Shown: positions 1 through 57,795 of the stretch, in pieces | How the letters are laid out: every line of letters begins with the position of its first letter | Position numbering within the stretch: position 1 is the stretch's first letter | Source: Macrostomum lignano | Lineage: Eukaryota | DNA: 64,000 nt | Assembly (NCBI GenBank): GCA_002269645.1 | Contig: NIVC01002252.1 | Span: forward strand, 1-64,000 | Direction: 5' to 3' | The notes under the pieces: model-generated | What the model saw: only the letters and a program-made list of their open reading frames with translations | What the model was told of the DNA's origin: nothing | The model's database searches: none | Position numbers and translations under genes: made by a program

Positions 1-572
1 GCATATTGATGTAAACAAAGCAGGCAGTCATAAAATCTTCAAGTCCAAGCTGCATCCATCGCACACTGCGTAAAACTTTTAAGTAAAAATCGACATTAGC
101 GAAAGCTTTCTTTAGCTAAATATTAGATTTTCAAGAAGGATTTTTACAAATTGCTGCAGTTGTTGGTGCTATGCAACACGAGATTCACCGCCAGCAACCC
201 AGACTGCTCCTCCACGAGTCAAGCCGGTGAGGCAGCGAAATTTAGCACGTAAAATGCATATCAACTCCAGCTAACACAGAGATTGAAAGTAAAGCACTAT
301 CTACTCTTTTCAGTGACAGTGCAGCTGAGCAGGGCTGACGTTCTGCGCACCTGGCAACCCAGCGGCGCGCACTGCCGTTGGTGGGAGAGTCGCAGTCAGA
401 GACAAACCGATTCCCTGCTGCTGTGCGGCCCGGGCCTCGTGGCTTGTGATGCAGCTGACGCAAGCCGATGATGCTGGAGGCGGTAAGCGTGCGAGACTGG
501 GGTGAGTGACGCTGACCGACTCATTCTCATGATGCATGATGAGGCAGAGGGAGCCTTGGACCCAAAGTGTGA

Positions 573-1455
573 GACAGTGTGATGCTAGCATCTAATTAGC
601 ACTCTGAGACAGTGTGAGACCAGCTAGTATCTAATTAGCACTCTGAGACAGTGTGAGACCAGCTAGCATCTAATTAGCACTCTGAGACAGTGTGAGACCA
701 GCTAGCATCTAATTAGCACTCTGAGACAGTGTGAGACCAGCTAGCATCTAATTAGCACTCTGAGACGGTGTGAGACCAGCTAGCATCTAATCAGCACTCT
801 GAGACAGTGTGAGATCAGCTAGCATCTAATTAGCACTCTGAGACAGTGTGAGACCAGCTAGCATCTAATTAGCACTCTGAGACAGTGTGAGACCAGCTAG
901 CATCTAATTAGCATCTAATTAGCACTCTGAGACAGTGTAAGACCAGCTAGCATCTAATTAGCACTCTGAGACACTATGATACCAGCTAGCATCTAATTAG
1001 CACTCTGAGACAGTGTGAGACCAGCTAGCATCTAATTAAGCACTCTGAGACAGTGTGAGACCAGCTAGCATCTAATTAGCACTCTGAGACAGTGTGAGAC
1101 CAGCTAGCATCTAAATTAGCACTCTGAGACAGTGTAAGACAGCTAGCATCTAATTAGCACTCTGAGACAGTAGACCAGCTAGTATCTAATTAGCACTCTG
1201 AGACAGTGTGAGACCAGCTAGCATCTAATTAGCACTCTGAGACAGTGTGAGACCAGCTAGCATAATTAGCACTCTGAGACAGTGTGAGACCAGCTAGCAT
1301 CTAATTAGCACTCTGAGACAGTGTGAGACCAGCTAGCATCTAATTAGCACTCTGAGACAGTGTGAGACCAGCTAGCATCTAATTAGCACTCTGAGACAGT
1401 GTGAGACCAGCTAGCATCTAATTAGCACTCTGAGACAGTGTGAGACCAGCTAGCA
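573..1455. repeat. 39-bp minisatellite (GCACTCTGAGACAGTGTGAGACCAGCTAGCATCTAATTA), about 22 units, A1 intron 2
   Basis: Direct tandem units read from sequence, with a few 1-11 nt indel variants; the last unit merges into the exon-3 acceptor GTGTTGCAG. Confidence 0.97.
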
Positions 1456-3299
1456 GCCAAGCACTCGTGTTGCAGATGGCCAGTGGCACGCAGCAGCTCC
1501 GGTCGGCTCGCCTGTGTCAGCGGTCGGAGCCTCGAGCCTCCCGCTGGAGCTGCAGCTGGAGGATCCGTGCCGCGCCAGCTGGGAGGCCTTCGGCAGCAGC
1601 GACCGCTGGAGGCAGATTGGGGTGAACGGAGTAGATCAAGTAAGCTGCTTCATTTGAATTATCTTATCATAATAATGAAATTAATAAATCCATCCATTTC
1701 ACACTTCAGCCGTAGTTCGTTTCCTTGTGCTAAGTAGCTGAGAACTGCTGGACTTAGCTGGAGGGCCGCGTCTCATTAACAGGTTCCAAAGAGACTTTTA
1801 AATTTTATGAAGTTATCACTGAATCATAGCTTATTGTGAATTAAGTGCTTTAGAAGCAGGTGCAATTTTTCTTGTAGGTCGCTTTCTACCGCTGAGCCTC
1901 ACAGTAACTGACAACCGTTTTTGCCCTCTGAGAGACCTGTCCGCCTTGCACGATGGAGTTGAAGCCTGCTTCTCTGTTTCAAGATGTACCAGCGAATCAA
2001 TTCAATGCTTCTTTAACCTAAGCAATGGCGCAACTCTGGAGCCGAGACTGGTCTGCTCAACTCTTCTTTATAGCGTGCTATCAATACTTCTTGCACTGAC
2101 TTGATACAAAATTCGCTTTTTCAGCTACGAAGCCAAAAGCAGCAAGCTGAATTCGAGTTCACAGCCAATTTCTCGCTGCACGGAGCACTGCTCACCTGTC
2201 TTCTGCCTGATCGGCCAGGGATTCGAATCGAGCAGACCATTGGAATCGTTGGTGAGAAAGAAGTGTCTGCCTGAGTTAAAAAATGTATTTTAAGTCCGCT
2301 TTGAAGATTACAAAGCGAAACATGCACTTTTCAGTCACACCAAGTGTTGAACTGTCGTTATCAACCGTGTGGGTGATTGGTCGCAGAGCCAAGGTGTACT
2401 TTTTCTCAAGCCCAGCTTATCCTCCTCAGCAGCACAGGTGCCAAATTATCTCTGGCAGCAGCACCTGGGAACTGAATGAGCATTTTAGTAAGGTAAGTAG
2501 TATTATATTATTGTTGAAAATGCTGTACCTTGCCCAATCATGTACTTTTCCATGAAATAAACTTCCAGACTAGACAGGCTTATATCAGGAACAGCATCAA
2601 CATGTCGCTAACTGAAGTAAAGTCTGAATTTGTTGTCACAGTCACGTCAGACATGCTGAATGGCACCGTGAGATGCAGTAGCAGCTATAAAAGTACAAGT
2701 CAAGGAGAAGTCATGAAAGATATCGATATTTCAAGCATCAGCGGTAAGTGCTTGCATTAGAGAATCTCCTATACGCCCGATTGGAAGAGCCATAAAATCT
2801 CCTCATTTCAGAGCCTTGCACAACTGCCATTCATGTAGACAACATCCAGTACTCGTATCAGGTTGTACAAGTGACGTCACTGAAGTGCAGCATTTGGAAT
2901 GTTCAGCACAGCTGCTGGCTTGTCAAGCCCAAAGAAGATGTCCTGGAGCATCTAATTAAGCTTGCTGTACGGTTCTTTGATTTTGTAATAATGCTTTTTA
3001 TTCAGAAGTTACTGCAACAATATCTGATGTCTTCTATTGCAGCAAGACGGCTTCAGCAGCACTCACAGGTTGAATATTATGAAACAAGAGCAGAAAAGAG
3101 ACTGGCTAGTGAGATGCAGCGTTAATCAGTCGGGAGTGACATACCCGGATGTGGAAATTGAGTTAGCAAGCGATGCTGACAGTGAGTCAAACGATGCATT
3201 CAATCACTGTTAATTGTTCCAATGCAAGTTCAAAGGTTTTTTACCACTTAAATCTACACTACACGTTGCTACATTTGTACTCGTATTAATACGAGCGTA

Positions 3300-3545
3300 A
3301 TGCAAGAGACCTGCGAGCACCCCGACGCTACGTCTTCGGCGACCTTGTCCGCAATCAGCTGCCGCGTTCCGCTCACTCCTGATCACATACGAGCGTACGA
3401 GCGCCTCAATACTGCACACAGGCACGCACTCATACGCACGCTCCCACAAGGTGTACTGCGGCCCTGACTTTCTAAGCGTCAGGCATGTACCTCTCTGGGC
3501 CTTAAGGGCTGGTCCTCATGAGCACTGAGCACGTTTGCTCTACTC
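3300..3545 (-). mobile_element. Diverged fragment related to SINE family 2
   Basis: GTGTACTGCGGCCCTGACTTT...AGGCATGTAC resembles 31400-31450 (GTGTACAGCGGCCCCTGACTTT...AGGCATGTAC); absent from the homologous A5 intron. Confidence 0.45.
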
Positions 3546-4551
3546 ACACTCCAGAATAAAAACAAATGAGCGTTTTTAATATTATAAACTGTACTCGTTC
3601 GTATTCTGTTGGCTGCCATTAAAGCGACTTTTGATAACAGTCAACCCACAGCCAGCGTGGAGTCGACCCAAATTAATTGGTCATTCCACATGTAAGCACT
3701 CGAGAGTGCTTACTTAAGCAACTATTCTTAATCGTTAAATTTTCAGGTAGTGTATCTTCATTTGCTTATTACCCCTCGTAACTTTGAGGTTGTAACTGTT
3801 GCGAGCCTAAGTGTTCGATGTGTAACTACTCTGCCACTTACTAACCCCACTTTCTTCAGCTTTCTACTATCAGTGTGGACTGAGTTGCATAATTTTGCCG
3901 ATTTTATCTGCCCTCGGCCTCATCCTGAGCTGCATGATTATTCGAAGAATTCGCCGCGCTAAATCAGCAAAGCCAAACTCGACTTCAAGTAGAAGTTCGA
4001 CATTTAGAGGACGACGTACCCTCCTCTCGAGTGCGGCCACCTCGCCGCAGGCACAGGTAGGGTTAGCCACAGATTTAGTTTGTACATTAGGGCACGCATG
4101 TAAGTGTCAAATACTGGTGTTTTGATGAAGAATAGCTTTAAACTTAAAAGAAAATTCTAGCTACCAGGGTTGTTTTGGCTATTCGCTCAAGCACTTTTGC
4201 TATGGCTTTTGCCTGAAACTGAAGCTATTTCTTAGATTAGCCTGGACACAGATTGCCTGGTAAATAGCGCTGCTTATCTGATCAGATTTCAGGTGTGCAC
4301 AGAAGCACAGTTCTAATTAGAACTTCCCTCAGCCTGAACGGCAATATTACATAAGTCCATGTGACTAAAATTTAGCAGTGAATTTCGGTGCATCTAATAC
4401 CAGCTTTTCTAGAGCTAGATCCACTTTTGTTTCTTTAAAAGTTTAATTCCCATTCTAAATAGCAATATAGTAGAGATATTCTGTTGAGTTTGTGAAATGA
4501 ATTGCGATCGCTTTCAATCAAGCGTGCTATGGCCTGCACGAGTATTCTATG

Positions 4552-4945
4552 AAGCCGTAGCCCATTGGTCAATCATGGATGAATAAAACCTTTGGTCTAG
4601 TGCGGCGCTCTGATGTGCCAGCGGCCCAGGCTCGATTCCAAGTGCAGTCATTAATTTGGGGCTAAATTGGAATCTCGGCTTGGCTCTGCTCGTGCAATTA
4701 ACGCCCCTGATCAGGGCCAACCCCCAAGGCACAGTGAAGTGCACATGTCTAAGATAAAGTTAGGGCCGCTGTAAACTCCTGTGTGAGTGAGTGCCTGTGC
4801 GTATGACTGCGTACGTATCCGCGCGCTTGTGTGCCTGCTCAGGGGAGTCGGGGAATGGGCAGCAATGCCTCTCGCCGGTTGTGACAATGTCGCCTAAAGT
4901 GCATCATGGGTGCAAACAGCTCCTTGCCTGTAACAAAAAAATGGC
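4552..4945 (+). mobile_element. tRNA-derived SINE, family 2
   Basis: A-box-like TAGCCCATTGG and B-box-like GGCTCGATTCC in the head; about 390-bp body repeated at 41200 (+) and 31236 (-). Confidence 0.7.
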
Positions 4946-6430
4946 CCTTATATTCCGTAGCCCAGAATCATGAGCAGGCTGAACTGCTAGATAGACAAGG
5001 AAGAAGCTGGCGTGATCAAAGCAATCTGTTAACTTTCTCACCTTTAAGGCCTATTAAAGTATCATGTTAAAATTCTTCAAAAGAAATGACTCTGAATAAC
5101 AGAAATCAATCGTTTCCACCCCCAGCGAGCGGCACCACAGCTCACTCATCATCAGGTTGATTCCTCGGCGTCAGTGAGCACAGGTGGTCCACCACCTGCA
5201 GAAAGCAGCAGCCGCGGCAATGAAAACAAGTCAATTAGCAGTCAAGAGACCGACCCAGTGTACGAAGAAGTATCTTTGTGTGTCTACAGGCCGGTGCACC
5301 CGCTGCCACGGTACTCACGGCAGTTCTCAGAAAAAAATTGTCGACGCGCCCACGACTCCAGTCGGTTTGATTGAAACTCTTGATCACATTCTGTAGGAAC
5401 CATTGAATAGAATGCACTGCAAACGGCACTTCGAGTATGTTCAGTAAACATTCTGATTCTACAAAAATAGGGATTGCTTCATCACTATTTGTATTACTAA
5501 TATTATCATTATTAAATGCACACACCCAGTGTTTTGAGTTTTATTTTTTACGATATTATTTGAGGCAACCTTATAAACACAGCGAAATAAGAAATTAAAA
5601 AAAGCTAGTGCGCAACGTTTTTTGGCGCAAATCGAAATTTAAAATAGAATCTCATATGCGCAAACAAATTATTCGAGATTCTTTTCGGTACCGATATGAA
5701 GCCTCAGGGCAGTTGCATTCTGGCCTGCGTCATGCCTTTGATGTATTTTTTGGGATTTCCATTATAAGAAGGGCCAGATAGAGAATCTAGCGCATTACTG
5801 TGGAGAGAGGAGAGGGAGAGAAAGAAAAGGGAGAGAAAAAGAGAAGAGATAATACAGTTGAGAGAGACAAGCTTTGTGCGGACTGCATTGCTATTTTGAA
5901 GTTTCAAAGGACCAGATGCGTATTAGATAGAGAGACTTCGCAGGTCGCATGTTACCTGGGAACCGCAGTTTGCCAACCCCTGTTTTAGAGTTATTACGTA
6001 AAGTACTTTATCCTCTGTAGGAAGTCGCTGTTAAATTCGAAACTTTATCCATGATTTCCTGTTCAAACTTATAACAGGAGCACAATAAAAGTTCCCACTA
6101 CACCTAAGCAGGAAACGAACTTCACTTCCTACACAGCACCCACATGGCATTTTGGGCAGGTCCTGTTCTCATAAGATATCTTTGGTCTCGCAGTCCTCAT
6201 ATATTGCTTTGCAGGCCAGTTTGTGGTTCGCTAATCTAAACTGTAACAGGGTGTGCTTAAATTCAATTCCAGCTCAAAAGCCAGCTCTGTGTGCTCTGAT
6301 TGATTTTGCTACTCGTCCATGCTGACAGTTTCGCATCATTTTGCTGTTGACTTTAGCTGCAATGCCAGCCTCTGTAGCTATATTGTTGACTATATATGGT
6401 TAGCTATATATGGTTAGCTATATATGGTTA

Positions 6431-6760
6431 GCGGTTGTAGTTTTAGTGGTTAGGGTTTCAGACTCACGACTTGAAGGTTGGGGGTTTGATTCCCGATCGG
6501 ACTGGAACAATTTGTGTCGCTTGATTGAATTTGAATTTTGAATTTGAATTTTGCATTGCTTCATAGTTCACCCAGCTGTAAAATGGGTGCCAGCATTACT
6601 GGGGTAATTGAGGGTGTGTGGCGACCCCAGTCCTTGGACTGAACAGCCGTACGCAGCCTTCAGATGCACCGCGAAATAGCTGCGGCTGAGCTGTCGGTTG
6701 CACATCTGGCCCCATTGGGGCAGGTGTAGTCAATAGTTATTGTTATTATTTATTTATTAC
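6431..6760 (+). mobile_element. tRNA-derived CORE-type SINE, family 1
   Basis: tRNA-like head (AGTGGTTAG...CAGACTCACGACTTGAAGG...GGTTTGATTCCC), CORE-like CACCCAGCTGTAAAATGGG, TTA-rich tail; copies at 9345 and 43535. Confidence 0.7.
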
Positions 6761-7365
6761 GCAGTTATATGTAGTATTCACTGCTATCTGAAGACTTAGC
6801 AACTGAATAACTTTTTTCAAGTTTTTGCAAAATCTATTGTACATTCAATTGTATCGTCTAAAACTTTCGCTGTACTGTAAATAAAAAAATCGTAAAATGG
6901 TAAGTTGTACTTGCTTTAGGATTAGATAATTTAGACTCATACCTCGTTTCTGCGGAATCTGAATTTAAAATTATAGAGAAGTTGATTTCAGTAGTCCCGA
7001 AGGAACATGCACGATCGTCTTTGCAACTATAGAATCATCCTGACGCATCTGAAACTTGTAATTTTAGCTTCAATATTGCAAACTAGACAGCGCAACGGCG
7101 ACTATAATCAAATTCATAACTACAAAAAAGCGTACAACCAGAAATTCAGTTTGGGTTGTTCCTGCCTCGATGCTGCTTTCGAATTAAAGGTTACATAATG
7201 ATCTGGCTGTCACAAACAGTAAGCATCTGTGACGGCAAGAAACACTGAACTTCGCTAGCTGCAGGTAAATTTAAGGCGTGATAAATTTCTGCCATCCAAC
7301 AATATTATCAGCTGAAAGCATAATCCAAGCCAAGTTGCTCAACAAGAAACGAAAAAGAATACCAG

Positions 7366-9135
7366 ATGGATCACAATCTTGTATGCATTCTGGTGCTGTT
7401 ACTGAGCTCAAGAATTGCATGCAATGCTCTGCTCTGCACTGATGCAAGTCACGAGAAGGGTCAGCTGAGTTACTTACTGCCTTTTGAGCCTTTCATTCAT
7501 GCCTCAGAAAATTTAGCGAATCCTTTGCGATAAATGTTTTAGTGACAGTGCAGCTGAGCAGGGCTGACGTTCTGCGCACCTGGCAACCCAGCGGTGCGCA
7601 CTGCCGTTGGTGGGAGAGTCGGCAGTGCTGGAGGCGGTGAGCTTGCGAGACCGGGGTGAGTGACGCTGACCGACTCATTCTCATGATGCATGATGAGGCA
7701 GAGGGAGTTTGAGACACAAAGTGTGAGACAGTGTGAGACCAGCTAGCATCTACGAGCGTAATTAGCACTCTGAGACAGTGTGAGACCAGCTAGCAGCCAA
7801 GCACTCGTGTTGCAGATGGCCAGTGGCGCCAAACACTCGTGTTGCAGATGGCCAGTGGCTCGCAGCAGCTCCGGTCGGCTCGCCCGTGTCAGCGGTCGGA
7901 GCCTCGAGCCTCCCGCTGGAGCTGCAGCTGGAGGATCCGTGCCGCGCCAGCTGGGAGGCCTTCGGCAGCAGCGACCGCTGGAGGCACCTTGGAAGATCTT
8001 ACAACAAGGTAGCAATGTTTACCTCGAACCCGTTGTGTATCTTTGCGGGATCGAGTATTTTAATAAAAGCAAGATCGAGGGAAATTTTTGCTTCAGGGTA
8101 AGGTCCGGTACATACTGGTCAGGAGCTGGACGAATGTTCCGCTAAGTTGGAGTGCCATGAAACTGTCAGGTCTTTTATTAAATTATTAAATCATCCTACT
8201 TATAATGGATGCGTTAAATTTTGTGACAATCGAGGCGCAAGACTAGTGAGTTATCTTTTTTAGGACCTTATGCTCCACTGAACCTCACCGTGATGAACAT
8301 TATGCAATGTTGGTTTAAAAACGTGGAAGCCATGAAGGCTGGGACCTTTGCCTGCCTCTTAGTTTCGAGCTGTCTTAACGGCTCGCTTGGCTGCCTCTTG
8401 AAGTATAGCAACGGGTCAACTCATCACCTGAGACAGGTGTGCCAATCTTTTTAAATAGATTTCGAATTGTCTGGAGCTTTGCTAAATTTTCTTATAAAAC
8501 TCTCCATCATGGCAGCTGAACAACCAGACGCAGCCTGCAGTGTTCGAACTCAGAGCCACCTCGGCAATGCACGATGCGACGCTCAGCTGCTTTCTGACAG
8601 ACTGACCTGCTGAGCGCATTGAGCAGACTATTGGCATTATTCGTGAGAGCGTTTTAATGAGAATGTTTCTGTTTCAGTTGACCCTGCCAGTCTGTCAGTA
8701 TCGGTGTCACCCGTGTGGGTCAGCGGCAGCAGCGTTACTGTGAATGTCACATCAGCTCCGGTTTACCCAGCACTGCATCACAGCTGCAGCATCATTTCTG
8801 CCAGCTCTGATTGGCGTCTGGATGAAAACCGCACAGATGTGAGATGAACTCATGACTTCTCTTTCTGCAGGACATCCTGTGAGATCAACTGTGCCTGACA
8901 ATTCTTATCTTTACTGTTACTCATTGTTGACGTTCAAACAACTTCCAGGTAAAAACGGCTGTCGCAAAAAATGACAAAAATCAGGCCCTGGTGGCGGTGG
9001 CGTCTCAGTTCAGATTCCAGGTCAGCGCCGAGATGCTGAACGGCACGTTGGAATGCGAGGGCAGATTTAGAGACCAAGTGAGGGAAACCGTTGCAGTGCA
9101 AACCAATGAGCGCTTTTTCATATCAGCAATAAGTG
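7366..9135 (+). pseudogene. Family A copy A2, truncated paralogue of A6
   Basis: Signal exon 7366-7459 (MDHNLVCILVLLLSSRIACNA). Exon 2 is 113 nt (76-nt deletion), CGA>TGA at 8603, and no Ig3, TM or tail exons are found after 9135. Confidence 0.8.
7720..7795. repeat. Residual 39-bp minisatellite (about 2 degenerate units), A2 intron 2
   Basis: Same unit as at 573-1455, collapsed. Confidence 0.8.
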
Positions 9136-9344
9136 GTGAGCTTCTTCAGAAAAAAGTTTCCATACTGAATGTAGACATAATTGCGTTTTTATTTGCAATT
9201 CAGCCGTCTAATTTGGTACCCTTTGATGAACTGCCTGTCTGCAAAAAATTCAAACTCCAAATATTTTCAAACTGCTATTATCCTTCTAAAACAGAACAGT
9301 TGACAGAATTATAGGGTCAATCGTACATTCCAAATGTCCGGGTT

Positions 9345-9492
9345 TGTAGCCTGGTGTTTAGAGCGTCGGACTCACAACTTGAAGAACGGGGGTTCGATTC
9401 TCGATCGCACTGGAATAATTTCTATCCTTGAGCAATACACTCAACTCTGCATTGCTTCAGTTCACCCAGCTGTAAAATGGGTGCCAGCATTA
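9345..9492 (+). mobile_element. SINE family 1, partial copy
   Basis: GGACTCACAACTTGAAG...GGTTCGATTCTCG...CCTTGAGCAATACACTCAAC...CACCCAGCTGTAAAATGGGTGCCAGCA. Confidence 0.7.
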
Positions 9493-11730: not shown

Positions 11731-12253
11731 AAAGACAATCCTAACTAGGAAAACGCCACTGCTCCGTATGCTAGACCGAACAGATATTGGTAATCCGCAA
11801 CAGATTGGGAATATACTGGGGATAGGCAATTCATAATAACATCTTCTTTCATAAGAACTATTTAAATCTAAATTGAATTTCTCATCTTAAAGTTCCACAA
11901 TAATCAAATTTTAATAAAAATTTCACAGCTAGAAATGTCTGAGCTGAGCTAAAAAAACTGTCGCCTCTGTCTCTCCTACTAGTGGCAATGGGTAGGGGTA
12001 GAGAATTTCTATTCTACTAGTGGCAAGAAATCAGAAACGTGGAAAACTTGCCATGAAAGCACCAAAACACCAGATGGAGTGAATGCCAGTACAGTCCATT
12101 GCATGCGATCAGATATGATGGGCTTTTATGCTGCTTGCTTAGTGAACACGTCACTTAAAATATAAAAGAAGCTGAATTAAGTCTGCGATTGTAACTTTAA
12201 AACCGGATAGCCAGCAACAGACTCGTAGCAGCAAAGATTTTAATAAAAGACCA

Positions 12254-46959: not shown

Positions 46960-49770
46960 TTTTGCTGCTGACTGTTAATTGCTGCTGACTGTTAATTACT
47001 GCTGACTGTTAATTACTGCTGACTGTTAATTACTGCTGACTGTTAATTACTGCTGACTGTTAATTATTGCTGACTGTTAATTACTGCTGACTGTTAATTA
47101 CTGCTGACTGTTAATTACTGCTGACTGTTAATTACTGCTGACTGTTAATTACTGCTGACTGTTAATTACTGCTGACTGTTAATTACTGCTGACTGTTAAT
47201 TACTGCTGACTGTTAATTATTGCTGACTGTTAATTACTGCTGACTGTTAATTACTGCTGACTGTTAATTACTGCTGACTGTTAATTACTGCTGACTGTTA
47301 ATTACTGCTGACTGTTAATTGCTGCTGACTGTTAATTACTGCTGACTGTTAATTACTGCTGACTGTTAATTACTGCTGACTGTTAATTACTGCTGACTGT
47401 TAATTACTGCTGACTGTTAATTACTGCTGACTGTTAATTACTGCTGACTGTTAATTACTGCTGACTGTTAATTACTGCTGACTGTTAATTATTGCTGACT
47501 GTTAATTACTGCTGACTGTTAATTACTGCTGACTGTTAATTACTGCTGACTGTTAATTACTGCTGACTGTTAATTACTGCTGACTGTTAATTACTGCTGA
47601 CTGTTAATTACTGCTGACTGTTAATTACTGCTGACTGTTAATTATTGCTGACTGTTAATTACTGCTGACTGTTAATTACTGCTGACTGTTAATTACTGCT
47701 GACTGTTAATTACTGCTGACTGTTAATTACTGCTGACTGTTAATTGCTGCTGACTGTTAATTACTGCTGACTGTTAATTACTGCTGACTGTTAATTACTG
47801 CTGACTGTTAATTACTGCTGACTGTTAATTACTGCTGACTGTTAATTACTGCTGACTGTTAATTACTGCTGACTGTTAATTACTGCTGACTGTTAATTGC
47901 TGCTGACTGTTAATTACTGCTGACTGTTAATTACTGCTGACAGTTTTACTGCTGACTGTTAATTACTGCTGACTGTTAATTGCTGCTGACTGTTAATTAC
48001 TGCTGACTGTTAATTACTGCTGACAGTTTTACTGCTGACTGTTAATTGCTGCTGACTGTTAATTATTGCTGACTGTTAATTACTGCTGACTGTTAATTAC
48101 TGCTGACTGTTAATTACTGCTGACAGTTTTACTGCTGACTGTTAATTACTGCTGACAGTTTTACTGCTGACTGTTAATTACTGCTGACTGTTAATTACTG
48201 CTGACTGTTAATTGCTGCTGACTGTTAATTACTGCTGACTGTTAATTACTGCTGACTGTTAATTACTGCTGACTGTTAATTACTGCTGACAGTTTTACTG
48301 CTGACTGTTAATTGCTGCTGACTGTTAATTACTGCTGACTGTTAATTACTGCTGACTGTTAATTACTGCTGACTGTTAATTACTGCTGACTGTTAATTAC
48401 TGCTGACTGTTAATTACTGCTGACTGTTAATTACTGCTGACTGTTAATTACTGCTGACAGTTTTACTGCTGACTGTTAATTACTGCTGACTGTTAATTAC
48501 TGCTGACTGTTAATTACTGCTGACAGTTTTACTGCTGACTGTTAATTACTGCTGACTGTTAATTACTGCTGACTGTTAATTGCTGCTGACTGTTAATTAC
48601 TGCTGACTGTTAATTACTGCTGACTGTTAATTACTGCTGACTGTTAATTACTGCTGACTGTTAATTACTGCTGACTGTTAATTACTGCTGACTGTTAATT
48701 ACTGCTGACTGTTAATTGCTGCTGACTGTTAATTACTGCTGACTGTTAATTACTGCTGACTGTTAATTACTGCTGACAGTTTTACTGCTGACTGTTAATT
48801 GCTGCTGACTGTTAATTACTGCTGACTGTTAATTACTGCTGACTGTTAATTACTGCTGACTGTTAATTACTGCTGACTGTTAATTACTGCTGACTGTTAA
48901 TTACTGCTGACTGTTAATTACTGCTGACTGTTAATTACTGCTGACTGTTAATTGCTGCTGACTGTTAATTACTGCTGACTGTTAATTACTGCTGACAGTT
49001 TTACTGCTGACTGTTAATTACTGCTGACTGTTAATTACTGCTGACTGTTAATTACTGCTGACAGTTTTACTGCTGACTGTTAATTACTGCTGACTGTTAA
49101 TTACTGCTGACTGTTAATTGCTGCTGACTGTTAATTACTGCTGACTGTTAATTACTGCTGACTGTTAATTACTGCTGACTGTTAATTACTGCTGACTGTT
49201 AATTACTGCTGACTGTTAATTACTGCTGACTGTTAATTACTGCTGACTGTTAATTGCTGCTGACTGTTAATTACTGCTGACTGTTAATTACTGCTGACTG
49301 TTAATTACTGCTGACTGTTAATTACTGCTGACTGTTAATTACTGCTGACTGTTAATTACTGCTGACTGTTAATTACTGCTGACTGTTAATTACTGCTGAC
49401 TGTTAATTGCTGCTGACTGTTAATTACTGCTGACTGTTAATTACTGCTGACTGTTAATTACTGCTGACAGTTTTACTGCTGACTGTTAATTACTGCTGAC
49501 TGTTAATTATTGCTGACTGTTAATTACTGCTGACTGTTAATTACTGCTGACAGTTTTACTGCTGACTGTTAATTACTGCTGACTGTTAATTACTGCTGAC
49601 TGTTAATTACTGCTGACTGTTAATTGCTGCTGACTGTTAATTACTGCTGACTGTTAATTACTGCTGACTGTTAATTACTGCTGACAGTTTTACTGCTGAC
49701 TGTTAATTACTGCTGACTGTTAATTACTGCTGACTGTTAATTGCTGCTGACTGTTTAATTACTGCTGACA
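46960..49770. repeat. 17-bp satellite (CTGTTAATTACTGCTGA) x about 165, A6 intron 7
   Basis: Near-perfect array with recurring A>G, C>T and 15-bp (CAGTTTTACTGCTGA) variants. Confidence 0.98.
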
Positions 49771-50004
49771 TTTAAACGACTTCCAGCTAGAAACAGCTGT
49801 CGCAAAAAATCACAACAATCAGACCCTGGTGGCGGTGGCGTCTCAGTTCAGATTCCAGGTCAGCGCCGCGATGCTGAACGGCACATTAAAATGCGAGGGC
49901 AGGTTTACAGACCAAGTGAGGGAAATTGTTCCAGTGCAGACCAATTTGCGCTATTTTCTATCAGCAATAAGTGGTAAGCTTTTTTAGAAAAATATTTCAT
50001 AACT

Positions 50005-50276
50005 ATCAACAATAACAAAAAATACGCGGCCCCGCAAGCAAAGGCCACACGAAGTCCGCTCCGTTGGCAGTGTCGGGCGCTCTAGCATCGCACAGCAGGC
50101 AGTCCACGTATCGACGGGTTCGGGCCTGACCCCGCCTGAACGGGTCCTGCAAGGTGAGCAGCAGGACGTCCTGAATCGGTTGGGGCCAGTAGCCCTCGGC
50201 CCGGATCACGTGGCCCGCCAGTTGTCCCGACGGTGGCCCGACGTGGCCCGACGGTCTCTTACTGCGAGGACTCTTA
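50005..50276. mobile_element. GC-rich 272-bp insertion of unknown class with a 6-bp TSD
   Basis: ATAACT at 49999-50004 and 50277-50282; the insert is absent from the homologous A2 intron. Confidence 0.55.
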
Positions 50277-50408
50277 ATAACTGGATGCTTACATTTTTGT
50301 TTTCAATTCAGCTGTCTAATTTTGGTACCCTATGATTCCCCGTCTGTCTGCATAAGATTCGAGCTCCAAACCTTTAAAAAACTGCTGCTTTTTAATTCTT
50401 TAAGTCTT

Positions 50409-50492
50409 TGACTTACTTGACTTAGCTGCCGGGGGCTCCGTGCGTTCGGAAACAGCGAGGAGGCGTTGCCGCCCGTTTCGCTAACCCCTGGC
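50409..50492 (-). mobile_element. 5'-truncated 3' end of a LINE related to the 25-31 kb element
   Basis: CTTACTTGACTTAGCTGC...ACAGCGAGGAGGCG...CGCCCGTTTCGCTAACCCCTG aligns with 25382-25456. Confidence 0.65.
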
Positions 50493-51635
50493 GACGATTT
50501 TTCAAGTCAATTTTAATCCAAGCAAAATGGCAATCGTTACAGAGCCCTGCTTGACGGTCATCCACCTGATCAGCATCCACCATCGATGGCTCACAGTCAG
50601 AGTGACGTCACAGCAGTGCAGCGTATGGAATGTCAGCCACAGTTGCTGGCTAACTTAAATCGGTGGAGGTGCAGCCGCCAGTAATTCGTCAAAAATGAGC
50701 AGCGCACAGGTAAGTTCAGAGGAATCGCAATGCCTATTAGCAATTAATTGATGATTACAGAAACTCGCCAATGCAAACTGCAGCAGACCGGCTTTAGCAG
50801 CTCTCACTGGGCTCGGCTGCCTGGAGGTCAGGAAAGCCGGGACTGGCTGGTCAGGTGCAGCGTCAGTCAGTCAGGCCTCCCATACCCGGATGTTGAAGCC
50901 AATTTCTCAACTGGAAGTGAGTGCTGACCAAATAGCTGCAGATCTGATTTTACCTTAAAGATAGCACTAAAATCAATGGCCTCATTTCAATCGCACAGCG
51001 AAATCGTCCGCGAACGCCAAGCGAATATTCGTCAACATATTTCTGCTCGCAGTCGCAGCCTCCGCCATCGGTCTGGGCTGCAAGCTGGCTGTCAGATTCT
51101 CCAGAGTGAGAAGGACGTCCTCGCCATGTGATGAGTCGAATGATGACGAGCTTAGCAGCAAAACCTGGGTAAGTGAGCACAGCACAGTCTCCAAAACAGT
51201 CTCAGGGGCCTATCATTGGGCATGGTGCATCCAAGGATTATGTAACTTATCTCGGAATGGTTATGTTGCCAATGCGACGCACTCAAGCGTACAATCAAAT
51301 ATGCTATCATACGGTCGTACCAGTAGCCATCAACTTTATGGGCATGTTGCAATGATGGTAAAAGTACTGCACAAGCTGCTTACAACTGAAGTTCTACTTT
51401 GCAAAAACTGCAAGCCATTCCATTAATAACTTTAAGGGCTCGCAAAATTGACAATGTCATTGAAAAGCGAACTTCAATTGCAAATTCGGATGAAAACTGG
51501 CTTATGTTACCTGCTTTATTCTGCAATGCGTTTTTAACAGTAAAAACTAAATTTATTGCTATCTACTGGAACTTCGCTACGAGCGTATTGAAAGTGAAAC
51601 AGTTAACTGGCTAAAACTAATAGGTTTATTGATGT

Positions 51636-51636
<1 letters not shown>

Positions 51637-51686
<50 letters not shown>
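51637..51686. repeat. (TG)n microsatellite
   Basis: Perfect dinucleotide run in the last intron of A6. Confidence 0.97.
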
Positions 51687-51687
<1 letters not shown>

Positions 51688-53889
51688 CTTTTGAAAATCT
51701 GTGATTCACGTGTTAGACATCAATGTGTCAGTCTGCTGTTTTAGTGCTGATTGAAATGCTTTAAATTTGTAGGCCAAGCAATTAATTTGTTATACTTGTA
51801 AATTCCCCTAGCTCTCAAGGCCGAATTTTAGATTCAAAACGGGATGGTCTTTATTTATTTGAGACCGACATTTTATTACGAGTATTCCATTAAATCAAGA
51901 CATAACTATTCACCAATCAGTACAACCCTATTTACTTCGTATATAATAGCAATCTTTTGATATTGGAGATCATAAAGATTTTGGATTCATGCTGTAGCAT
52001 GAAATTGATGGACTTTATTTGGCTTGCCTACGTAATTTCTCAACTGTGCACATTCATGCTACTACAGGTAGCATCCCAGCGCGATGCTGTCGAGACCTTC
52101 CAGATGCCAACTCTGCTGAACGAATTCGCAATTCACGGCGACGGAGTGTCCGCTGGCAGCAGCGAATACGACTACCCAACCCAATGAGAAACTGGAGACC
52201 TGCAAAAATGCGACTCATTGGGCCTACCAACAGGGGCCGTTACTTCCATCACGCCTCAAACTACTGATTAAGAGTTAGGTGTACAGCCTGGAAGTGAAAC
52301 TTGAGTCTTCTTTTAACTTTACTGGTGACCTTGGTGCATGCAGGGTTTATCCACGCTATTATATATTCAGTAGTAAGCTTGCATATGAGCTCTGTGTGTA
52401 TTGCAGCTCGATATGGTTATTTAATGCTGATTTGATCCACTAGTCTGTACATGTATTTTCTCTGATAATTTGCAATACAGTGTCTGTGAACACCATCCAT
52501 CTATTCACGTGATTTAAACCTAAGAAATAATAACACCCAAATATCTGATTCTCCTATCATAGAGCAACTCATCTCAATGCATGAAATCGCGATTCAAAAC
52601 ACGACAGATATCTGAGATACTCTAGGATAGAAAGCCAGATCTGAAAGCTTGGGCGTATCTCTGGCTCACCAGGCGCGACTGACGCTACAATAAAAACAGT
52701 AGTAAGCAATGGAAAGGTTCTAGTGAAATCGGCAGTTTGCAATTAATAAATATACGAGCGTAATTTTGCACAAATCTGATCGAGCGTACATGTATTTAGG
52801 TCATCAAAAATTTATTTTCAGCATATCGGACTGGCCGAAAGCGCCACACGATTCTCATCAAATTTATAACTTCGACAAGAATGCAGCATCTCTCACCAAA
52901 GCGTTCAACCGGAAACTCACAGCTCTTCCTGCCTCGATGCTTCTTCCGAATGAACTGTCGAGAAAAAGCTGATATCTACTTGTATACACGTTAGCAAACC
53001 GGGCCGCAGAAGGGGGGGCGAAAAATCGGGCCAAACGAGCCCGGCGAGAGCGAGAGCATTTTACGCGAAATCAAAGTGTCACAAGCAAAGTTACCGGTAA
53101 TTCGCTAAGTAAACAGACTTTCAGATTGCAATCCACAACATTGAGCTAAAGGATATCCCACATAAAGTGCTAGATTTTAAAATGGAATCTTTTTTATCAC
53201 AAGTTAGGCACGCATATTGTCTGTATAGTTAGTTTCATCAAATTTGGCTCAAGTTCAGCTCAGTTTGACATTTTAAAATGGCCTCCGACCCATTATTCTC
53301 CGTGTGCGATTCTCCATAAACCCTTGTAAAATCTAGTAAGACGTTGGTCAAAAAAGTTTTACTAAACAGATTAACAAAAGACAGTCCCAAACTGAGGATC
53401 AAAACCCACTGGAGATATAAGCATATCCTCAAAAAAGCGTGAAGACAAGTCCCAATAACATCTGATTTCGTTACAGCTTTTTAAAATTTAAATTGAGTTG
53501 TTCCTCATTTGAAAGTTCGACAATAATCTAATTTTCATAAAACTTTCATATCAATAAAGGGAAAACAACCACCGTCTAACGTCACTCTGGTGCTACGATG
53601 GCCAGTTTAGGTAGAGAATTTCTACCAGGCAACAGAGTTAGAAAGGTAGAGAGATTTGCCTCATGGCAAAATCAGCATTTAAAGCACCAAACACCAGATA
53701 GAGGGAATGCTAGTGCAGTTCACTGCATGCAATCAGATATGATGGCCTTTTATGCTGATTGCCGCATGCAACGCAACAATTTATATACCACTGAATATAA
53801 AACAAGCTGACCAAAGTCTCCGATTGTCAATCTTCAACCGGAAAACCAGAAACAGAGTTGTAACAATACAGATTCTTATTAGAAGAATA

Positions 53890-56800
53890 ATGAAAAATTC
53901 ACTTTGGCATCTGCTGCCTCTGCTGCTGAGCATGCGAGTTGCTGAATCATTGAACTGCTCCGCTGTGAATCGCACGGGTGAGTCAGTGGCTCTTTAGGAG
54001 CAGCTCAAGCCTACATGTAGCAAAGCAATAAGGCTGCAAATATTTAGCGATACATTTCCAGTGACAGTGCAGCTGAGCAGGGCTGACGTTCTGCGCACCT
54101 GGCAACCCAGCGGTGCGCACTGCCGTTGGTGGGAGAGTCGGCAGTCAGAGACAAACCGATTCCCTGCTGCTGTGCGGTCCGGGCCTCGGTGGCTTGTGAT
54201 GCAGCTGAGGCAGCCGATGATGCTGGAGGCGGTGAGCGTGCGAGACTGGGGTGAGTGATGTTGACCGACTCATTCTCATGATGCATGATGAGGCAGAGGG
54301 AGTCTGGGATACAGTGTGTGAGACAGTGTGAGACCAGCTAGCATCTAATTAGCACTCTGAGACAGTGTGAGACCAGCTAGCATCTAATTAGCACTCTGAG
54401 ACAGTGTGAGACCAGCTAGCATCTAATTAGCACTCTGACACAGTGTGAGACCAGCTAGCATCTAATTAGCACTCTGAGACAGTGTGAGACCAGCTAGCAT
54501 CTAATTAGCACTCTGAGACAGTGTGAGACCAGCTAGCAGCCAAGCACTCGTGTTGCAGATGGCCAGTGGCTCGCAGCAGCTCCGGTCGGCTCGCCCGTGT
54601 CAGCGGTCGGAGCCTCGAGCCTCCCGCTGGAGCTGCAGCTGGAGGATCCGTGCCGCGCCAGCTGGGAGGCCTTCGGCAGCAGCGACCGCTGGAGGCAGGT
54701 CGGACATGGCGAAGCGGTAATGCGGGTGCAGCAAATGTTTGATTTTATTGCCGCCTCAAGCAGATCATGTTGCACTTCAGGTTTTGACAACGTTTATCCG
54801 GCTACTCAGCGAGAGTTCGCTTGCTTGGCAGGCCATAAATATCTCAGGAAAGTTTGCTAATTTCACTTTGCTGATCTCATTTAGTCTGTTTTCTATTGAC
54901 AATAAATATTTCCAGGCCGCCATGCATTGATGTGCATCAACATGAACCTGTTCAGTAACCTTCTCTTCCATCGGCTCGGCCTCTTCGTCAGCGAAGACGC
55001 TCAACATTCGATTTCTTGGATCAACCTCTTTGTAGATAGCTGCAGCTTCGGCAATGCCGCCTGCTGGCTTTCCGATTCTTCTGGAAGAATTGTCAGCGCA
55101 ACGCTGGTGAGCGGGCCATCAAGGACCTTGGTTTTCAAGCATGCATTCGATTGTGCATTCAGTAGGCTGAGGAAGTACTCAACTGGCTTTAGGTTGGCTC
55201 GTCTCGAGCTGATGAAAGTGGGATTCGGACTCACAAGCTCGAGTTTGGAGCTCTTCCTGATGACCACGGAAAGCTGCTGCAGTGCGGCTTGAGCACTTCT
55301 CAAGGCGCTGTTCTGCTCAAGAAGCTGCTGTTGTGGGAAGGTGCTCTTCTTTTGCTTTTCTTTGTTTTCGCAGCGGTGATTGAACTGCAGATCATATTGC
55401 AACTGGAGTTTAGTTTAGGGATGGATGGAGACGCTGATGGATCGCAGACTCAGGTGTACCCTCGACAGTCTCAGATTAAGTTTTAAGCTTTTTATTTAAC
55501 GCCATGTTAAAAATATTTATTTTTAGTTTCAGTCAAAGCTCTGCACATCTCAGCTTTGCCAGTCCTGGTTGCTGGGCAGCTGGCAAAGCTCAGCGTGTTC
55601 TCAGATTCTTTGCCTGAGGCTCAGCACCGCTGCTTCATCGGGAGGCCGGGGTCGCAGCGAAGTCGAAACCTCACTGCTCTGAGCACTGTAATTTCCTGAT
55701 AATTGCGAATGCATTGCCTGCGCGTTCCATGAAATGAACTTTCCTTCTTGATTTTCAATTTCAGAGCGAGTCAAAAACCATCGACAGCTGGAACAGAACA
55801 CTCGTCAGAGTTCGCTCAGAGTTCGGTTTTAATGTATCCATGGCTGATCAAAATTCCATCATCATGTGCAAAGGAACTGCTGGATCAGAAAGGAAGGAGG
55901 CTACTTGGTATCAAAGCATTTCAGAAATCAGTGGTATGAATATTTAAAAGAATTTTGGGGAACTATGATAATAAATCAAAAAAGAAGAATAACTTTAAGA
56001 GGATTTTTTCTTTATTCGCTGACATCTTTGGCAACCTAGCATGCGCCGTGTAGTCCTCATTGGCCCTTAAAGTCCTCTTGACTGCCCTAACAAGCCGGAA
56101 CATAAGTATGCTTCATCAGTCTGTGCTTCATCTTTCAGAGCCCTGCGAGACAGCCGTGGACTTGGGACCGGAGAAATTCTGGCTGGTGGGGCAGATCAAG
56201 CTGGTTCAGGTGATCTCTAAGCGCTGCAGCATCTGGAATGTGAGCCACAGCTGCTGGCTGAAACTGAATGGTGATGCTGCAGTCAGCACACCGCTTCAGA
56301 AAGTGCAAGTGAGTGAAAATCACCTTTGGTAAATTCTTAATGAACAAACTTCATTCAGGTCTAGAATATGTCAGCTGTCTTCACCTTTGCACCAATTTCG
56401 GTTACAGCAGGGTGAGTTCAACAGCACTCACGAGCTTCGGGTATTCGAGGCGATGACCCGTCAGAATTGGCAGGTTTTGTGCAGCGTCAATCAGTCTGGA
56501 GTTGAGCACAGTGACTCAGAAAGCAGTCTGAGCAGTGCACCAGCTGTTTTTTGTGAGTCATTTAAAGTTTTTAACGTTTCTGTTCAATTTGAATCGAAAA
56601 AATCAAAAGCCGAATCTTTCTTGTCATTGGAAAAACCTCAAGGCAAAGCCAGCAGGTCAACGCTTGAACTCGCGTTAGCCTACGTCTTTAACAGCCATTC
56701 TGAAGTTCACGTGCGTGCAGTTTATCAAAATAAAAACCAAAACCTACTACTTCCTGTGCACAGCATCAACTGCTCAGTTGCAGATGAGGCATCGTCAAAG

Positions 56801-57795
56801 CTTAGCAATATCAGCAAGACTGAATGGTACGGTTTACTGAAACTGAGATGGAGCCGCTCATCTGTGAATGTCTGCTGCTCCAGTTACCAAACTTATGCTG
56901 GATTGACTGTCTTTAAGTCTCTGCAGTGCAAATCTTTAACCCAACAGCCCGTTGGTAAAGACGGTGAGCAGATGTTTGTGGTTACTAATCTACAGTCATC
57001 TTCATTAACAGATGAGCAGCATTTGACAAGATTCTAATAAAGACTTTCTTAGCTCTGTTAATAGCCAGCCTTCATACCGGTAGGATTTAAAAAATGGAAT
57101 GTCTGGTTCTTTTAACAGAGTCGTCTTAGATTGAAACAGGAAATTCTCAACCGGAAATAATTAGAATATGTTATCATGACTTAAATGTAATACACTCGTG
57201 GGACACAATACTTCGTTGACGATTTGCAGCTCATAGCGACGATCGCTTGACAATGTTTTTCTCGCTTCTATTGGCTTCTGTACTGGCTTCACTAGTTGTG
57301 GGCTTTCTTCTGTCTGCAATATACCACAAATTTGATATACTTTTTACTTGCGAGAGAAATTCGGTGAGTCATATAGAAGCATGAAATTCAATTTTAAGTC
57401 TGCCCCTAAGGGTTCCACGTCACCATTCGTACCATTTTTGTACTATGCTCAAACATAACCCATGTATAGTTCAATTTCCCTAGTATGTGTTCTTAGTGCT
57501 TCGACAATGACATGGTAATTTTTAATTGATACTTCGGGAACGGATGTATTTTCAGCCACGGAGAGGTCACGCTGGACAATGTCCAAGTCAGCACAATGCA
57601 GGTCAGGCCGTCCCAATGCGAATACGGAACAACTTCGCAGTGCAAAGTGACTCACGTGGCAGCAGTGAATACGACTACCCAATAACTGAGCAGTCAGGAA
57701 GCTACGAAAATGAGCAGTTGGGTCACGAAGGTGCCTACACGCAGGTGCTGCTGGCTCCTTTACAGGGATTACTGAATGAAGGTCAATCAGACTGA
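53890..57795 (+). CDS. Family A receptor A7, paralogue of A3 (about 726 aa)
   Basis: Exons 53890-53977, 54062-54250, 54559-54716, 54781-54847 (GA donor), 54916-55106, 55193-55340, 55527-55687, 55765-55933, 56139-56308, 56408-56552, 56643-56963, 57230-57363, 57556-57795; stop-free; tail EYDYP, SYENE, AYTQV. Confidence 0.75.
54312..54540. repeat. 39-bp minisatellite, about 6 units, A7 intron 2
   Basis: Same unit as in A1. Confidence 0.95.

What the first reader, a model, noticed from the sequence alone, without database searches (positions are those of the whole stretch)
133..57795. Unrecognised family of discoidin-like + atypical-Ig + tyrosine-tail receptors, 7 tandem copies
Seen: seven plus-strand genes share one exon/phase skeleton (signal; a domain over exons 2-4; 3-4 domains bounded by phase-1 introns and mostly split by a phase-0 intron; TM; Tyr tail). 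Motifs RWLVMQLRQPMMLEAVSV and VRYILVRSW..LSWSAMKLSG resemble F5/8C strands; GFSSTHRL...WLVRCSVNQSG resembles Ig E-F strands. Known: invertebrate lectin+Ig variable families (snail FREP/CREP/GREP) and clustered Ig-like Alr genes of Hydractinia. Inference: this is a separate lectin-like+Ig membrane family with birth-and-death evolution, a candidate immune or allorecognition receptor complex. I do not recognise this architecture from any described family.
Basis: partly seen in the sequence, partly recalled or inferred. Interest (0 to 1): 0.88.

Follow-up and report, generated by a model that had tools for sequence, protein, structure and literature searches.

The report
Flatworm-specific Ig-like receptor gene cluster
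This stretch of the flatworm Macrostomum lignano genome holds seven tandem copies (two fully intact, two open but with an odd splice site, three damaged) of a membrane-receptor family found only in this species so far, built from an unidentifiable N-terminal domain, three or four immunoglobulin-like domains and a tyrosine-bearing tail; it is a new kind of Ig-superfamily cluster whose function is not known.

Summary
The window is Macrostomum lignano DNA.

Copy status:
- Copies 4 and 5 are fully canonical.
- Copies 3 and 7 are open 13-exon genes, but both have GA in place of the exon-4 GT donor.
- Copy 6 carries one TAA.
- Copies 1 and 2 are pseudogenes. Position 133 is AAG, not ATG.

The array is a ~20-kb segmental duplication (1,2,3 = 5,6,7) with copy 4 and a LINE between the halves.

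AlphaFold and Foldseek support the Ig-like domains (best PDB matches SYG-2, CD22, RAGE, SIRP, nectins). The "discoidin-like" N-terminal domain is not supported: no Pfam or PDB match, pLDDT ~30, hhalign probability 1%.

An exhaustive HMMER search of 1.84 billion representatives found 35 relatives, all M. lignano, and no paper describes them.

This is a sharp gene-conversion tract around a 39-bp minisatellite.

An immune or allorecognition role remains speculation.

The parts
133..5374 (+). Copy 1 (type A), 12 exon equivalents. 5' part is disrupted: AAG for ATG at 133-135, three 1-nt indels in exon 2 (314-501), and exon 4 (1710-1782) closed in all frames. Exons 5-12 are intact, including the tail exon 5126-5374 (..DPVYEEVSLCVYRPV..). 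Likely pseudogene.
7366..9135 (+). Copy 2 (type B), truncated pseudogene. Exon 2 (7543-7722) has an out-of-frame internal deletion. There is a TGA at 8603 in Ig1b. Exons for Ig3, TM and tail are absent.
12254..16212 (+). Copy 3 (type C), 13 exons, 741-742 aa, open frame: signal, N-domain, Ig1-Ig4, TM, tail (EYDYP, AYTQV, VYVNQ). Exon-4 donor is cag|GA (13339). An in-phase GT lies 6 nt upstream.
20296..24701 (+). Copy 4 (type D), 14 exons, 731 aa, all GT-AG, open. Exon 3 is diverged, Ig4 is split, and the tail has AYDYP and an ITIM-like PSVYLVL.
37714..42036 (+). Copy 5 (type A), 12 exons, 627 aa, all GT-AG, open: signal, N-domain, Ig1-Ig3, TM, tail exon 41788-42036 (DPVYEEV, LCVYRPV).
44232..52187 (+). 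Copy 6 (type B), 12 exons, 585 codons, with one in-frame TAA at 50656 in Ig3a. A paralog elsewhere (P0021) has Gln at that position. Tail ends ..GSSEYDYPTQ. Intron 7 holds a 2.8-kb array of a 17-bp repeat.
53890..57795 (+). Copy 7 (type C), 13 exons, 738 aa, open. Exon-4 donor is cag|GA (54848) with no nearby in-phase GT. Tail has EYDYP, SYENE and AYTQV.
54062..54725 (+). Homogenised block in copy 7: exon 2, intron 2 with the 39-bp minisatellite (54319-54538), and exon 3. Equivalent blocks in the other copies: 314-1630, 7543-8008, 12418-13207, 20460-21532, 37890-38619, 44415-46031.
1..19300 (.). Segmental duplicate I: copies 1, 2, 3 plus one gene of the second family. Colinear with 37580-61300 at 72-96% DNA identity.
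37580..61300 (.). Segmental duplicate II: copies 5, 6, 7 plus one gene of the second family.

Best explanation
The window carries part of a tandem array of a Macrostomum lignano-restricted family of type I membrane glycoproteins.

Each intact member has:
- a signal peptide;
- a ~145-residue beta-rich N-terminal domain of unknown fold;
- three or four Ig-like domains;
- one transmembrane helix;
- a 65-120-residue cytoplasmic tail with two to five tyrosines in SH2-type contexts. A shared (E/A)YDYP motif occurs in types B, C and D. Copy 4 has an ITIM-like SVYLVL. Type A has YEEV. Type C has YxN.

The most likely working mode, which is inferred, is a cell-surface recognition receptor: the ectodomain binds a ligand and the tail signals through tyrosine phosphorylation.

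The array evolves in three ways, all shown here:
- tandem and segmental duplication;
- loss (three of seven copies are damaged);
- gene conversion that keeps exon 2-intron 2-exon 3, the core of the N-terminal domain, almost identical in all paralogs while the Ig domains and tails diverge.

By analogy with paired leukocyte receptors and CEACAMs, whose ligand-binding domains are homogenised in the same way, the invariant N-terminal domain may bind one common ligand while stalks and tails vary the output. This last step is inference only.
For: Gene models:
- Splice-validated models exist for five copies.
- Transcript-based GenBank paralogs P0016, P0029 and P0033 have the same junctions and architecture.

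Ig fold:
- AlphaFold pLDDT is 74-94 for Ig2 and Ig3 and 57-77 for Ig1.
- Foldseek PDB top hits are SYG-2 D1-D4 (E 6.5e-10), CD22 d1-3, RAGE, SIRP, nectins, DIPs and KIT.
- A weak Pfam C2-set_2 hit falls in Ig2.

TM helix and tails.

Constraint:
- Between copies 3 and 7, exons have 3.6 indels/kb (7 of 8 are multiples of 3) against 41.8/kb in introns (14 of 50). dN is 0.085 against intron K of 0.20.

Lineage restriction: 35 hits, all M. lignano.

Duplication and decay.

Conversion tract:
- Exon 2 is 96-99% and the intron-2 flanks 91-98% identical in DNA between paralog types.
- Introns 1 and 3 sit at 57-85% (57-75% in all pairs but copies 4 and 7), and the other domains are 14-52% identical in protein.

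Analogy: abstracts of PMC3210942 and PMC7042247, listed.
Against: - There is no expression or junction evidence for the window's own copies.
- Only two of seven copies are fully canonical.
- Copies 3 and 7 need a GA donor, or in copy 3 a GT 6 nt upstream, to join the N-domain to Ig1.
- dN/dS between sister copies is high (0.57-0.69), which fits relaxed constraint as well as diversifying selection.
- The N-terminal domain and Ig4 have no confident structure.
- Signal peptide, TM segment and tyrosine motifs are read from sequence only.
- No activating-type charged TM residue was seen, so a paired activating/inhibitory system is not shown.
- Ligand, tissue and function are unknown.
Confidence: 0.7

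Rival explanations
1. The N-terminal domain is a divergent discoidin (F5/8 type C, galactose-binding-like) lectin domain, so the proteins are lectin-plus-Ig pattern-recognition receptors.
For: - The domain is ~145 residues with scattered predicted beta-strands.
- The single hhalign local alignment pairs ADVLRTWQPSG...RWLVMQLRQPM with TNMFATWSPSK...EWLQVDFQKTM of factor VIII C2. These are the equivalent strands, with pairwise P = 0.044.
- UniRef's automatic names for two fragments mention F5/8 type C and Bgal_small_N.
Against: - hhalign probability is 1.2%.
- There is no Pfam hit at E<=10 and no PDB sequence hit with a domain profile.
- AlphaFold gives pLDDT 25-50 in two runs.
- There is no Cys pair at the two ends of the domain.
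- UniRef names for this family are erratic (DUF2531, Spatacsin_C, Mediator 16, Agenet and others), so they carry no weight.
Confidence: 0.2
2. The proteins are homophilic or heterophilic cell-adhesion or wiring molecules of the nephrin/SYG, nectin or DIP/Dpr type, not immune receptors. The multigene diversity would serve tissue or neuronal specificity.
For: - The best structural matches are adhesion IgSF ectodomains: SYG-2, nectins, DIPs and Rst.
- The tails carry SH2-type tyrosines, as in nephrin (nephrin tail from general knowledge).
Against: - There is no sequence relationship to those conserved families.
- Rapid turnover, pseudogenes and dN/dS of 0.6-0.7 are unusual for conserved adhesion systems.
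- Foldseek ranks CD22, SIRP and RAGE equally high.
Confidence: 0.25
3. The family serves mate or gamete recognition in this outcrossing hermaphrodite, evolving fast under sexual selection.
For: - Lineage restriction and elevated dN/dS.
- Reproduction-related genes evolve rapidly in Macrostomum (PMC7336406, abstract).
Against: - No family ID was found in the supplementary tables of that paper.
- There are no expression data.
- The invariant N-terminal domain is not what a fast co-evolving recognition surface would look like.
Confidence: 0.1
4. The array is mostly dead DNA: a decaying cluster of pseudogenes whose apparent open frames reflect youth, not function.
For: - Three of seven copies are damaged and two more lack a canonical exon-4 donor.
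- dN/dS is 0.57-0.69.
Against: - Exon indels are 12-fold depleted and in-frame between copies 3 and 7.
- Copies 4 and 5 are fully canonical.
- Transcript-based full-length paralogs exist.
Confidence: 0.07

Closest known systems
Clustered paired Ig-superfamily receptors of vertebrates (KIR/LILR, SIRP, Siglec/CD22, CEACAM)
   Same: - Type I membrane proteins with tandem Ig-like domains, in tandem gene clusters with pseudogenes.
- Tyrosine motifs in the tails, including one ITIM-like motif.
- Gene conversion that homogenises the membrane-distal domain while tails differ (PMC3210942 and PMC7042247).
   Different: - No sequence homology.
- The membrane-distal domain here is not an Ig domain but an orphan domain.
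- No activating partners with a charged TM residue were seen.
- Ligand and cell type are unknown.
Nephrin/SYG-2, Kirre/SYG-1, nectins and DIP/Dpr adhesion IgSF
   Same: - Best Foldseek matches (4ofy_D E 6.5e-10; 4fom, 4fmf, 6efy).
- Multi-Ig ectodomain, single TM, tyrosine-bearing tail.
   Different: - Those are conserved bilaterian families. This one has no detectable relatives outside M. lignano.
- It has an extra N-terminal non-Ig domain.
- TM-scores are low (0.2-0.5) because only the domain folds match.
Hydractinia Alr1/Alr2 allorecognition complex
   Same: Clustered type I membrane proteins with Ig-like domains and lineage-restricted sequences (general knowledge).
   Different: - Alr specificity lies in a hypervariable N-terminal domain. 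Here the N-terminal domain is the least variable part.
- M. lignano is solitary.
- Polymorphism was not testable.
Snail FREP/CREP/GREP lectin-plus-Ig families
   Same: Invertebrate, diversified, Ig-like domains combined with another domain (general knowledge).
   Different: - FREPs are secreted, with N-terminal IgSF domains and a C-terminal fibrinogen, C-type lectin or galectin domain recognisable by Pfam.
- Here the order is reversed, a TM segment and tail are present, and no lectin domain is detectable.
Discoidin-domain membrane proteins (DDR, neuropilin, CASPR)
   Same: An N-terminal ~150-residue beta-rich domain on a type I membrane protein, with weak motif resemblance.
   Different: - No significant match to F5/8C by Pfam, PDB profile or hhalign.
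- No kinase, CUB, MAM or laminin-G domains.

Membership tests
Immunoglobulin superfamily (Ig-like fold domains) | Beta-sandwich Ig fold | tested here: met
   AlphaFold model of paralog P0016: Ig2 pLDDT 85-94, Ig3 74-86, Ig1 57-77. Foldseek PDB top 50 are Ig-domain arrays, prob 1.00. Ig4 is not confident (<50).
Immunoglobulin superfamily (Ig-like fold domains) | Sequence match to an Ig-family profile above threshold | tested here: not met
   Pfam gives only C2-set_2 at 13-17 bits against a cutoff of 21. PDB hmmsearch found nothing.
Immunoglobulin superfamily (Ig-like fold domains) | Domain exons bounded by phase-1 introns | tested here: met
   Exon tables for copies 3-7. One exception: a phase-2 junction in copy 4.
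Discoidin / F5/8 type C domain | Match to PF00754 or to a solved discoidin domain by sequence | tested here: not met
   No Pfam hit at E<=10. No PDB hit with the N-domain profile. hhalign against FVIII C2 gives prob 1.2%.
Discoidin / F5/8 type C domain | Eight-stranded distorted jelly-roll fold | tested here: inconclusive
   Two AlphaFold runs give pLDDT 25-50 for this domain. The alignment is too invariant to inform the model.
Discoidin / F5/8 type C domain | Disulfide joining the N- and C-terminal ends of the domain | tested here: not met
   Conserved Cys residues sit at the start, at ~27 and at ~104 of the 151-residue domain, with none at its C-terminal end.
Paired inhibitory/activating immune receptors | ITIM (S/I/V/L)xYxx(I/V/L) in some members | tested here: met
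   Copy 4 has PSVYLVL. This is a pattern match only; other tails do not fit strictly.
Paired inhibitory/activating immune receptors | Activating partners with a short tail and a charged TM residue | tested here: not met
   None of the five TM segments shows a mid-membrane K, R, D or E. Only copy 6's TM window ends in ...GCKL, at the cytoplasmic edge.
Paired inhibitory/activating immune receptors | Homogenised ligand-binding domain between paralogs | tested here: met
   Exon 2-3 block is 91-99% identical in DNA between types, including the intron flanks. That it binds ligand is not shown.
Hydractinia Alr-type allorecognition genes | Hypervariable membrane-distal domain, extreme allelic polymorphism | tested here: not met
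   The membrane-distal domain is 95-98% identical between paralogs. Allelic polymorphism is not testable with these tools.
Snail FREP family | C-terminal fibrinogen-related domain, secreted | tested here: not met
   No FBG domain in Pfam. A TM segment and cytoplasmic tail are present.
Nephrin/SYG-2 orthologues | Sequence orthology across Bilateria | tested here: not met
   A profile of 30 members found only M. lignano proteins in 1.84 billion representatives.

The most novel reading that the evidence does not exclude
A flatworm has independently evolved a paired-receptor-like complex. An orphan, conversion-homogenised N-terminal domain binds one common self or microbial ligand. Divergent Ig stalks and tyrosine tails (ITIM-like, YEEV, YxN) give different signalling outputs. 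The complex is interleaved with a second family of lectin-like membrane proteins. This would be a convergent counterpart of the vertebrate leukocyte receptor and NK complexes.
Probability: 0.15. Interest if true: 0.75.

Novelty: new variant of a known kind. Interest (0 to 1): 0.48.

Why it matters
Flatworm surface recognition and immune receptors are almost unknown. This is a large, species-restricted Ig-superfamily family with at least 35 clusters at 50% identity. It has an N-terminal domain with no detectable relatives, clear tyrosine-signalling tails, and a textbook-sharp gene-conversion tract centred on a minisatellite intron. M. lignano allows transgenesis and RNAi, so function can be tested directly. 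The locus is also a compact natural example of birth-and-death and concerted evolution acting on different exons of the same genes. The sequences already sit in public databases under misleading automatic names and as chimeric gene models, which this analysis corrects for this locus.

Tried and rejected
- Pfam on single exons and on full-length models found nothing above threshold.
- PDB sequence searches with family and N-domain profiles found nothing.
- Two AlphaFold runs failed to fold the N-terminal domain. I did not run Foldseek on the second, low-confidence model because its matches would be meaningless.
- hhalign against factor VIII C2 was not significant.
- My first reading that copies 3 and 7 lack Ig1 was wrong. 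The Ig1 exons are there (54916-55340 and 13406-13812), and the long minus-strand ORF at 55004-55414 is a by-product of them.
- I considered that copy 1's frameshifts are assembly errors. All six lie in exons 1, 2 and 4 while 1.4 kb of downstream exons have none, so uniform error is unlikely, but it is not excluded.
- Literature and supplement searches for family gene IDs or an Ig-like family in Macrostomum found nothing.
- My by-eye reading of the neighbouring family as CUB plus C-type lectin got no Pfam support. It got only E~1.2 hits to the CD69 C-type lectin-like domain.


Full report
**Source and reality of the observation.** An all-against-all comparison of open frames and a self-blastn show seven paralogous plus-strand copies. 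Database searches with the N-terminal exons and then with an alignment of the paralogs return only Macrostomum lignano proteins. Two of them, the chimeric UniRef models P0010 and P0011, reproduce copy 3 and copy 4 of this window almost residue for residue. The window is therefore M. lignano nuclear DNA.

**Gene models.** I wrote a spliced protein-to-genome aligner (GT-AG introns, phases, frameshift states). I combined it with three-frame reading and validated explicit exon tables.
- Copy 7 (53890-57795) has 13 exons and 738 aa.
- Copy 3 (12254-16212) has 13 exons and about 741 aa.
- Copy 4 (20296-24701) has 14 exons and 731 aa.
- Copy 5 (37714-42036) has 12 exons and 627 aa.
- Copy 6 (44232-52187) has 12 exons and 585 codons.

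It consists of a signal-like exon ending in phase 1; an N-terminal domain over exons 2-4 (phases 1, 0, 1); Ig-like domains bounded by phase-1 introns and split by a phase-0 intron; a TM exon; and a last exon with tyrosines. There are exceptions. In copy 4 the Ig1/Ig2 junction is phase 2. Ig4 is one exon in copies 3 and 7 and two exons in copy 4. Types A and B have three Ig-like domains.

**Not all seven are genes.**
- *Copy 1.* It has AAG at 133-135 where copy 5 has ATG, and three 1-nt indels in exon 2. Its exon 4 is closed in all three frames. Its exons 5-12 have no indel and keep the Tyr tail.
- *Copy 2.* It has an out-of-frame deletion in exon 2 and a TGA at 8603, and it lacks Ig3, TM and tail.
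- *Copy 6.* It has one TAA at 50656. A paralog elsewhere (P0021) reads Gln there, so this is a nonsense substitution.
- *Copies 3 and 7.* Both have cag|GA where the other five copies have G|GT at the exon-4 donor. Copy 3 has an in-phase GT 6 nt upstream, which the UniRef model P0010 uses (…WQAIS|RYAVM…). Copy 7 has no such GT.
- Only copies 4 and 5 are fully canonical.

**Are copies 3 and 7 functional?** Between them, exons carry 3.6 indel events per kb, and 7 of 8 are multiples of three. The one exception lies at the extreme 3' end. Introns carry 41.8 per kb, and 14 of 50 are multiples of three. dN is 0.085, dS is 0.12 and intron divergence is 0.20, giving dN/dS of 0.69. The reading frame has therefore been maintained in both genes across both sides of the odd donor. 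How exon 4 is joined to exon 5 remains unexplained. dN/dS is 0.62 for copies 1 and 5 (exons 5-12) and 0.57 for copies 2 and 6.

**Large-scale structure.** Positions 1-19300 and 37580-61300 are colinear at 72-96% identity. That is, copies 1, 2, 3 plus a gene of a second family correspond to copies 5, 6, 7 plus a gene of that family. Between the two blocks lie copy 4, a decayed non-LTR retrotransposon on the minus strand (RVT_1, RNase_H and Exo_endo_phos_2), and another second-family gene.

**Concerted evolution of the N-terminal domain.** Between the four paralog types, exon 2 is 95-98% identical in protein and 96-99% in DNA. The first and last 60 nt of intron 2 are 91-98% identical, and exon 3 is 76-95% identical in DNA. 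By contrast, introns 1 and 3 are at 57-75% in nearly all pairs, which is alignment background. Exon 4 is 14-36% identical in protein, the Ig domains 23-52% and the tails 21-49%. Intron 2 holds a 39-bp minisatellite of 5.6 to 29.6 units, with 41- and 50-bp variants in copies 4 and 3. Because intron sequence is homogenised as strongly as exon sequence, and the boundaries are sharp, this is a gene-conversion tract rather than purifying selection alone. One divergent paralog (P0053) keeps the core motifs (FPA…GPSWLVLQLKQPM…LPL…FEDPC). This supports the region being a genuine protein domain.

**Folds.** Pfam gives nothing above threshold for full-length models. The only hits are C2-set_2 at 13-17 bits in Ig2. 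PDB sequence profiles give nothing.

AlphaFold2 was run on the transcript-based paralog P0016 with a 30-sequence family alignment. It gives confident beta-sandwiches for Ig2 (pLDDT 85-94) and Ig3 (74-86), moderate confidence for Ig1 (57-77), and a TM helix. It gives no fold for the N-terminal domain (~30) or for Ig4. Foldseek against the PDB returns tandem Ig ectodomains: SYG-2 D1-D4 (E 6.5e-10), CD22 d1-3, RAGE VC1C2, SIRP, nectins, DIPs and KIT. The Ig-like reading is supported at fold level.

A second AlphaFold run centred on the N-terminal domain again gave pLDDT 25-50, with scattered strands. The discoidin idea is a lead without a passing test.

**Distribution.** A profile of 30 members was searched with HMMER against 1.84 billion cluster representatives. 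It found 35 proteins at E <= 0.001. Every one that I looked up, including the ten I looked up at the weak end of the list, is from M. lignano. GenBank BOX15_Mlig models derive from a genome-guided RNA-seq transcriptome (PMC5730564). P0016, P0029 and P0033 are therefore transcript evidence for the architecture and for the canonical exon 4-Ig1 junction in paralogs. At the P0016 locus the family gene is again flanked on both sides by second-family genes. No paper or supplement searched mentions the family.

**Tails.**
- Types B, C and D share (E/A)YDYP.
- Copy 4 adds PSVYLVL, which fits the ITIM consensus.
- Type A has DPVYEEV and LCVYRPV.
- Type C has AYTQV plus YENE (copy 7) or YVNQ (copy 3), which are YxN motifs.

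These are pattern matches read against well-known SH2-binding consensus motifs. Phosphorylation has not been shown.

**Interpretation.** The best-supported reading is a lineage-restricted family of type I Ig-superfamily receptors with an orphan membrane-distal domain and tyrosine-based signalling. The family evolves by duplication, loss and localised gene conversion. The homogenised distal domain combined with divergent tails resembles vertebrate paired receptors and CEACAMs (PMC3210942 and PMC7042247, abstracts). However, no activating-type members were seen, and the ligand-binding role of the domain is assumed. Adhesion or wiring, or mate and gamete recognition, are live alternatives. Allorecognition of the Hydractinia type is disfavoured because the distal domain is the least variable part. 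The family is not a member of any described family by homology. As a kind, it is a new variant of clustered IgSF receptors.

Noticed in passing
window 17535-19300, 34205-36970, 59563-61233, 62658-64000 (plus strand); L001:5732-6336 and L001:23843-24631: A second repeated family of ~415-aa type I membrane proteins is interleaved with the Ig-like genes, both here and at the P0016 locus. It has no Pfam hit. It gives only E~1.2 hits to the first strands of the CD69 C-type lectin-like domain (FCSREMLSFNRKCYAVSS...). The UniRef models P0010 and P0011 wrongly fuse one of its exons between copies 3 and 4.
   Followed up: partly
window 25490-31100, minus strand: A GC-rich (55-59%) decayed non-LTR retrotransposon with Exo_endo_phos_2, RVT_1 and RNase_H ORFs broken into several frames. 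It lies between copy 4 and the next second-family gene.
   Followed up: yes
window 13339 and 54848: Copies 3 and 7 share GA instead of GT at the exon-4 donor, yet both keep 2.2-kb open frames under clear indel constraint. Either a rare GA-AG intron is used, or an alternative donor (present only in copy 3), or the N-domain and the Ig part are expressed separately.
   Followed up: partly
L001:4510-5578: The same 39-bp minisatellite that fills intron 2 of every family copy also occurs outside a family gene at another locus, just upstream of a second-family exon. It is therefore a dispersed repeat, not private to this intron.
   Followed up: no
window 10115-11732; 46965-49769; 24345-24449; 33776-34045; 22949-23139: Large tandem arrays:
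- a 102-bp unit x16 where the 3' half of copy 2 should be;
- a 17-bp unit x166 filling intron 7 of copy 6;
- (GTCA)26 in the last intron of copy 4;
- (ACAG)68 upstream of a second-family gene;
- a 15-bp unit x12.7 in intron 8 of copy 4.
   Followed up: no
window 4604-4940, 41253-41602 and, inverted, 31237-31585: A ~350-bp dispersed repeat sits in the last intron of both type A copies and next to the end of the retrotransposon. It is probably a mobile-element fragment.
   Followed up: no
database proteins P0001-P0043: UniRef's automatic names for members of this one family are mutually inconsistent: DUF2531, Spatacsin_C, Mediator subunit 16, Agenet, VWFD, RHD, SRCR, PLAT, F5/8 type C, NPHN. Several models are fragments with frameshifted translations of exon 2 (P0004, P0009). 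Names and models for this family should not be trusted.
   Followed up: partly
window 20460-21532 (copy 4 exons 2-3): Copy 4's exon 3 has escaped the homogenised block in part. DGQWLAAAPVGSPVSAVGAS is replaced by GFLWHPAPPGVGVGVS and two conserved Trp are lost, while its exon 2 is still 95-97% identical to the others. The conversion tract therefore seems to end inside the intron-2 minisatellite for this copy.
   Followed up: partly
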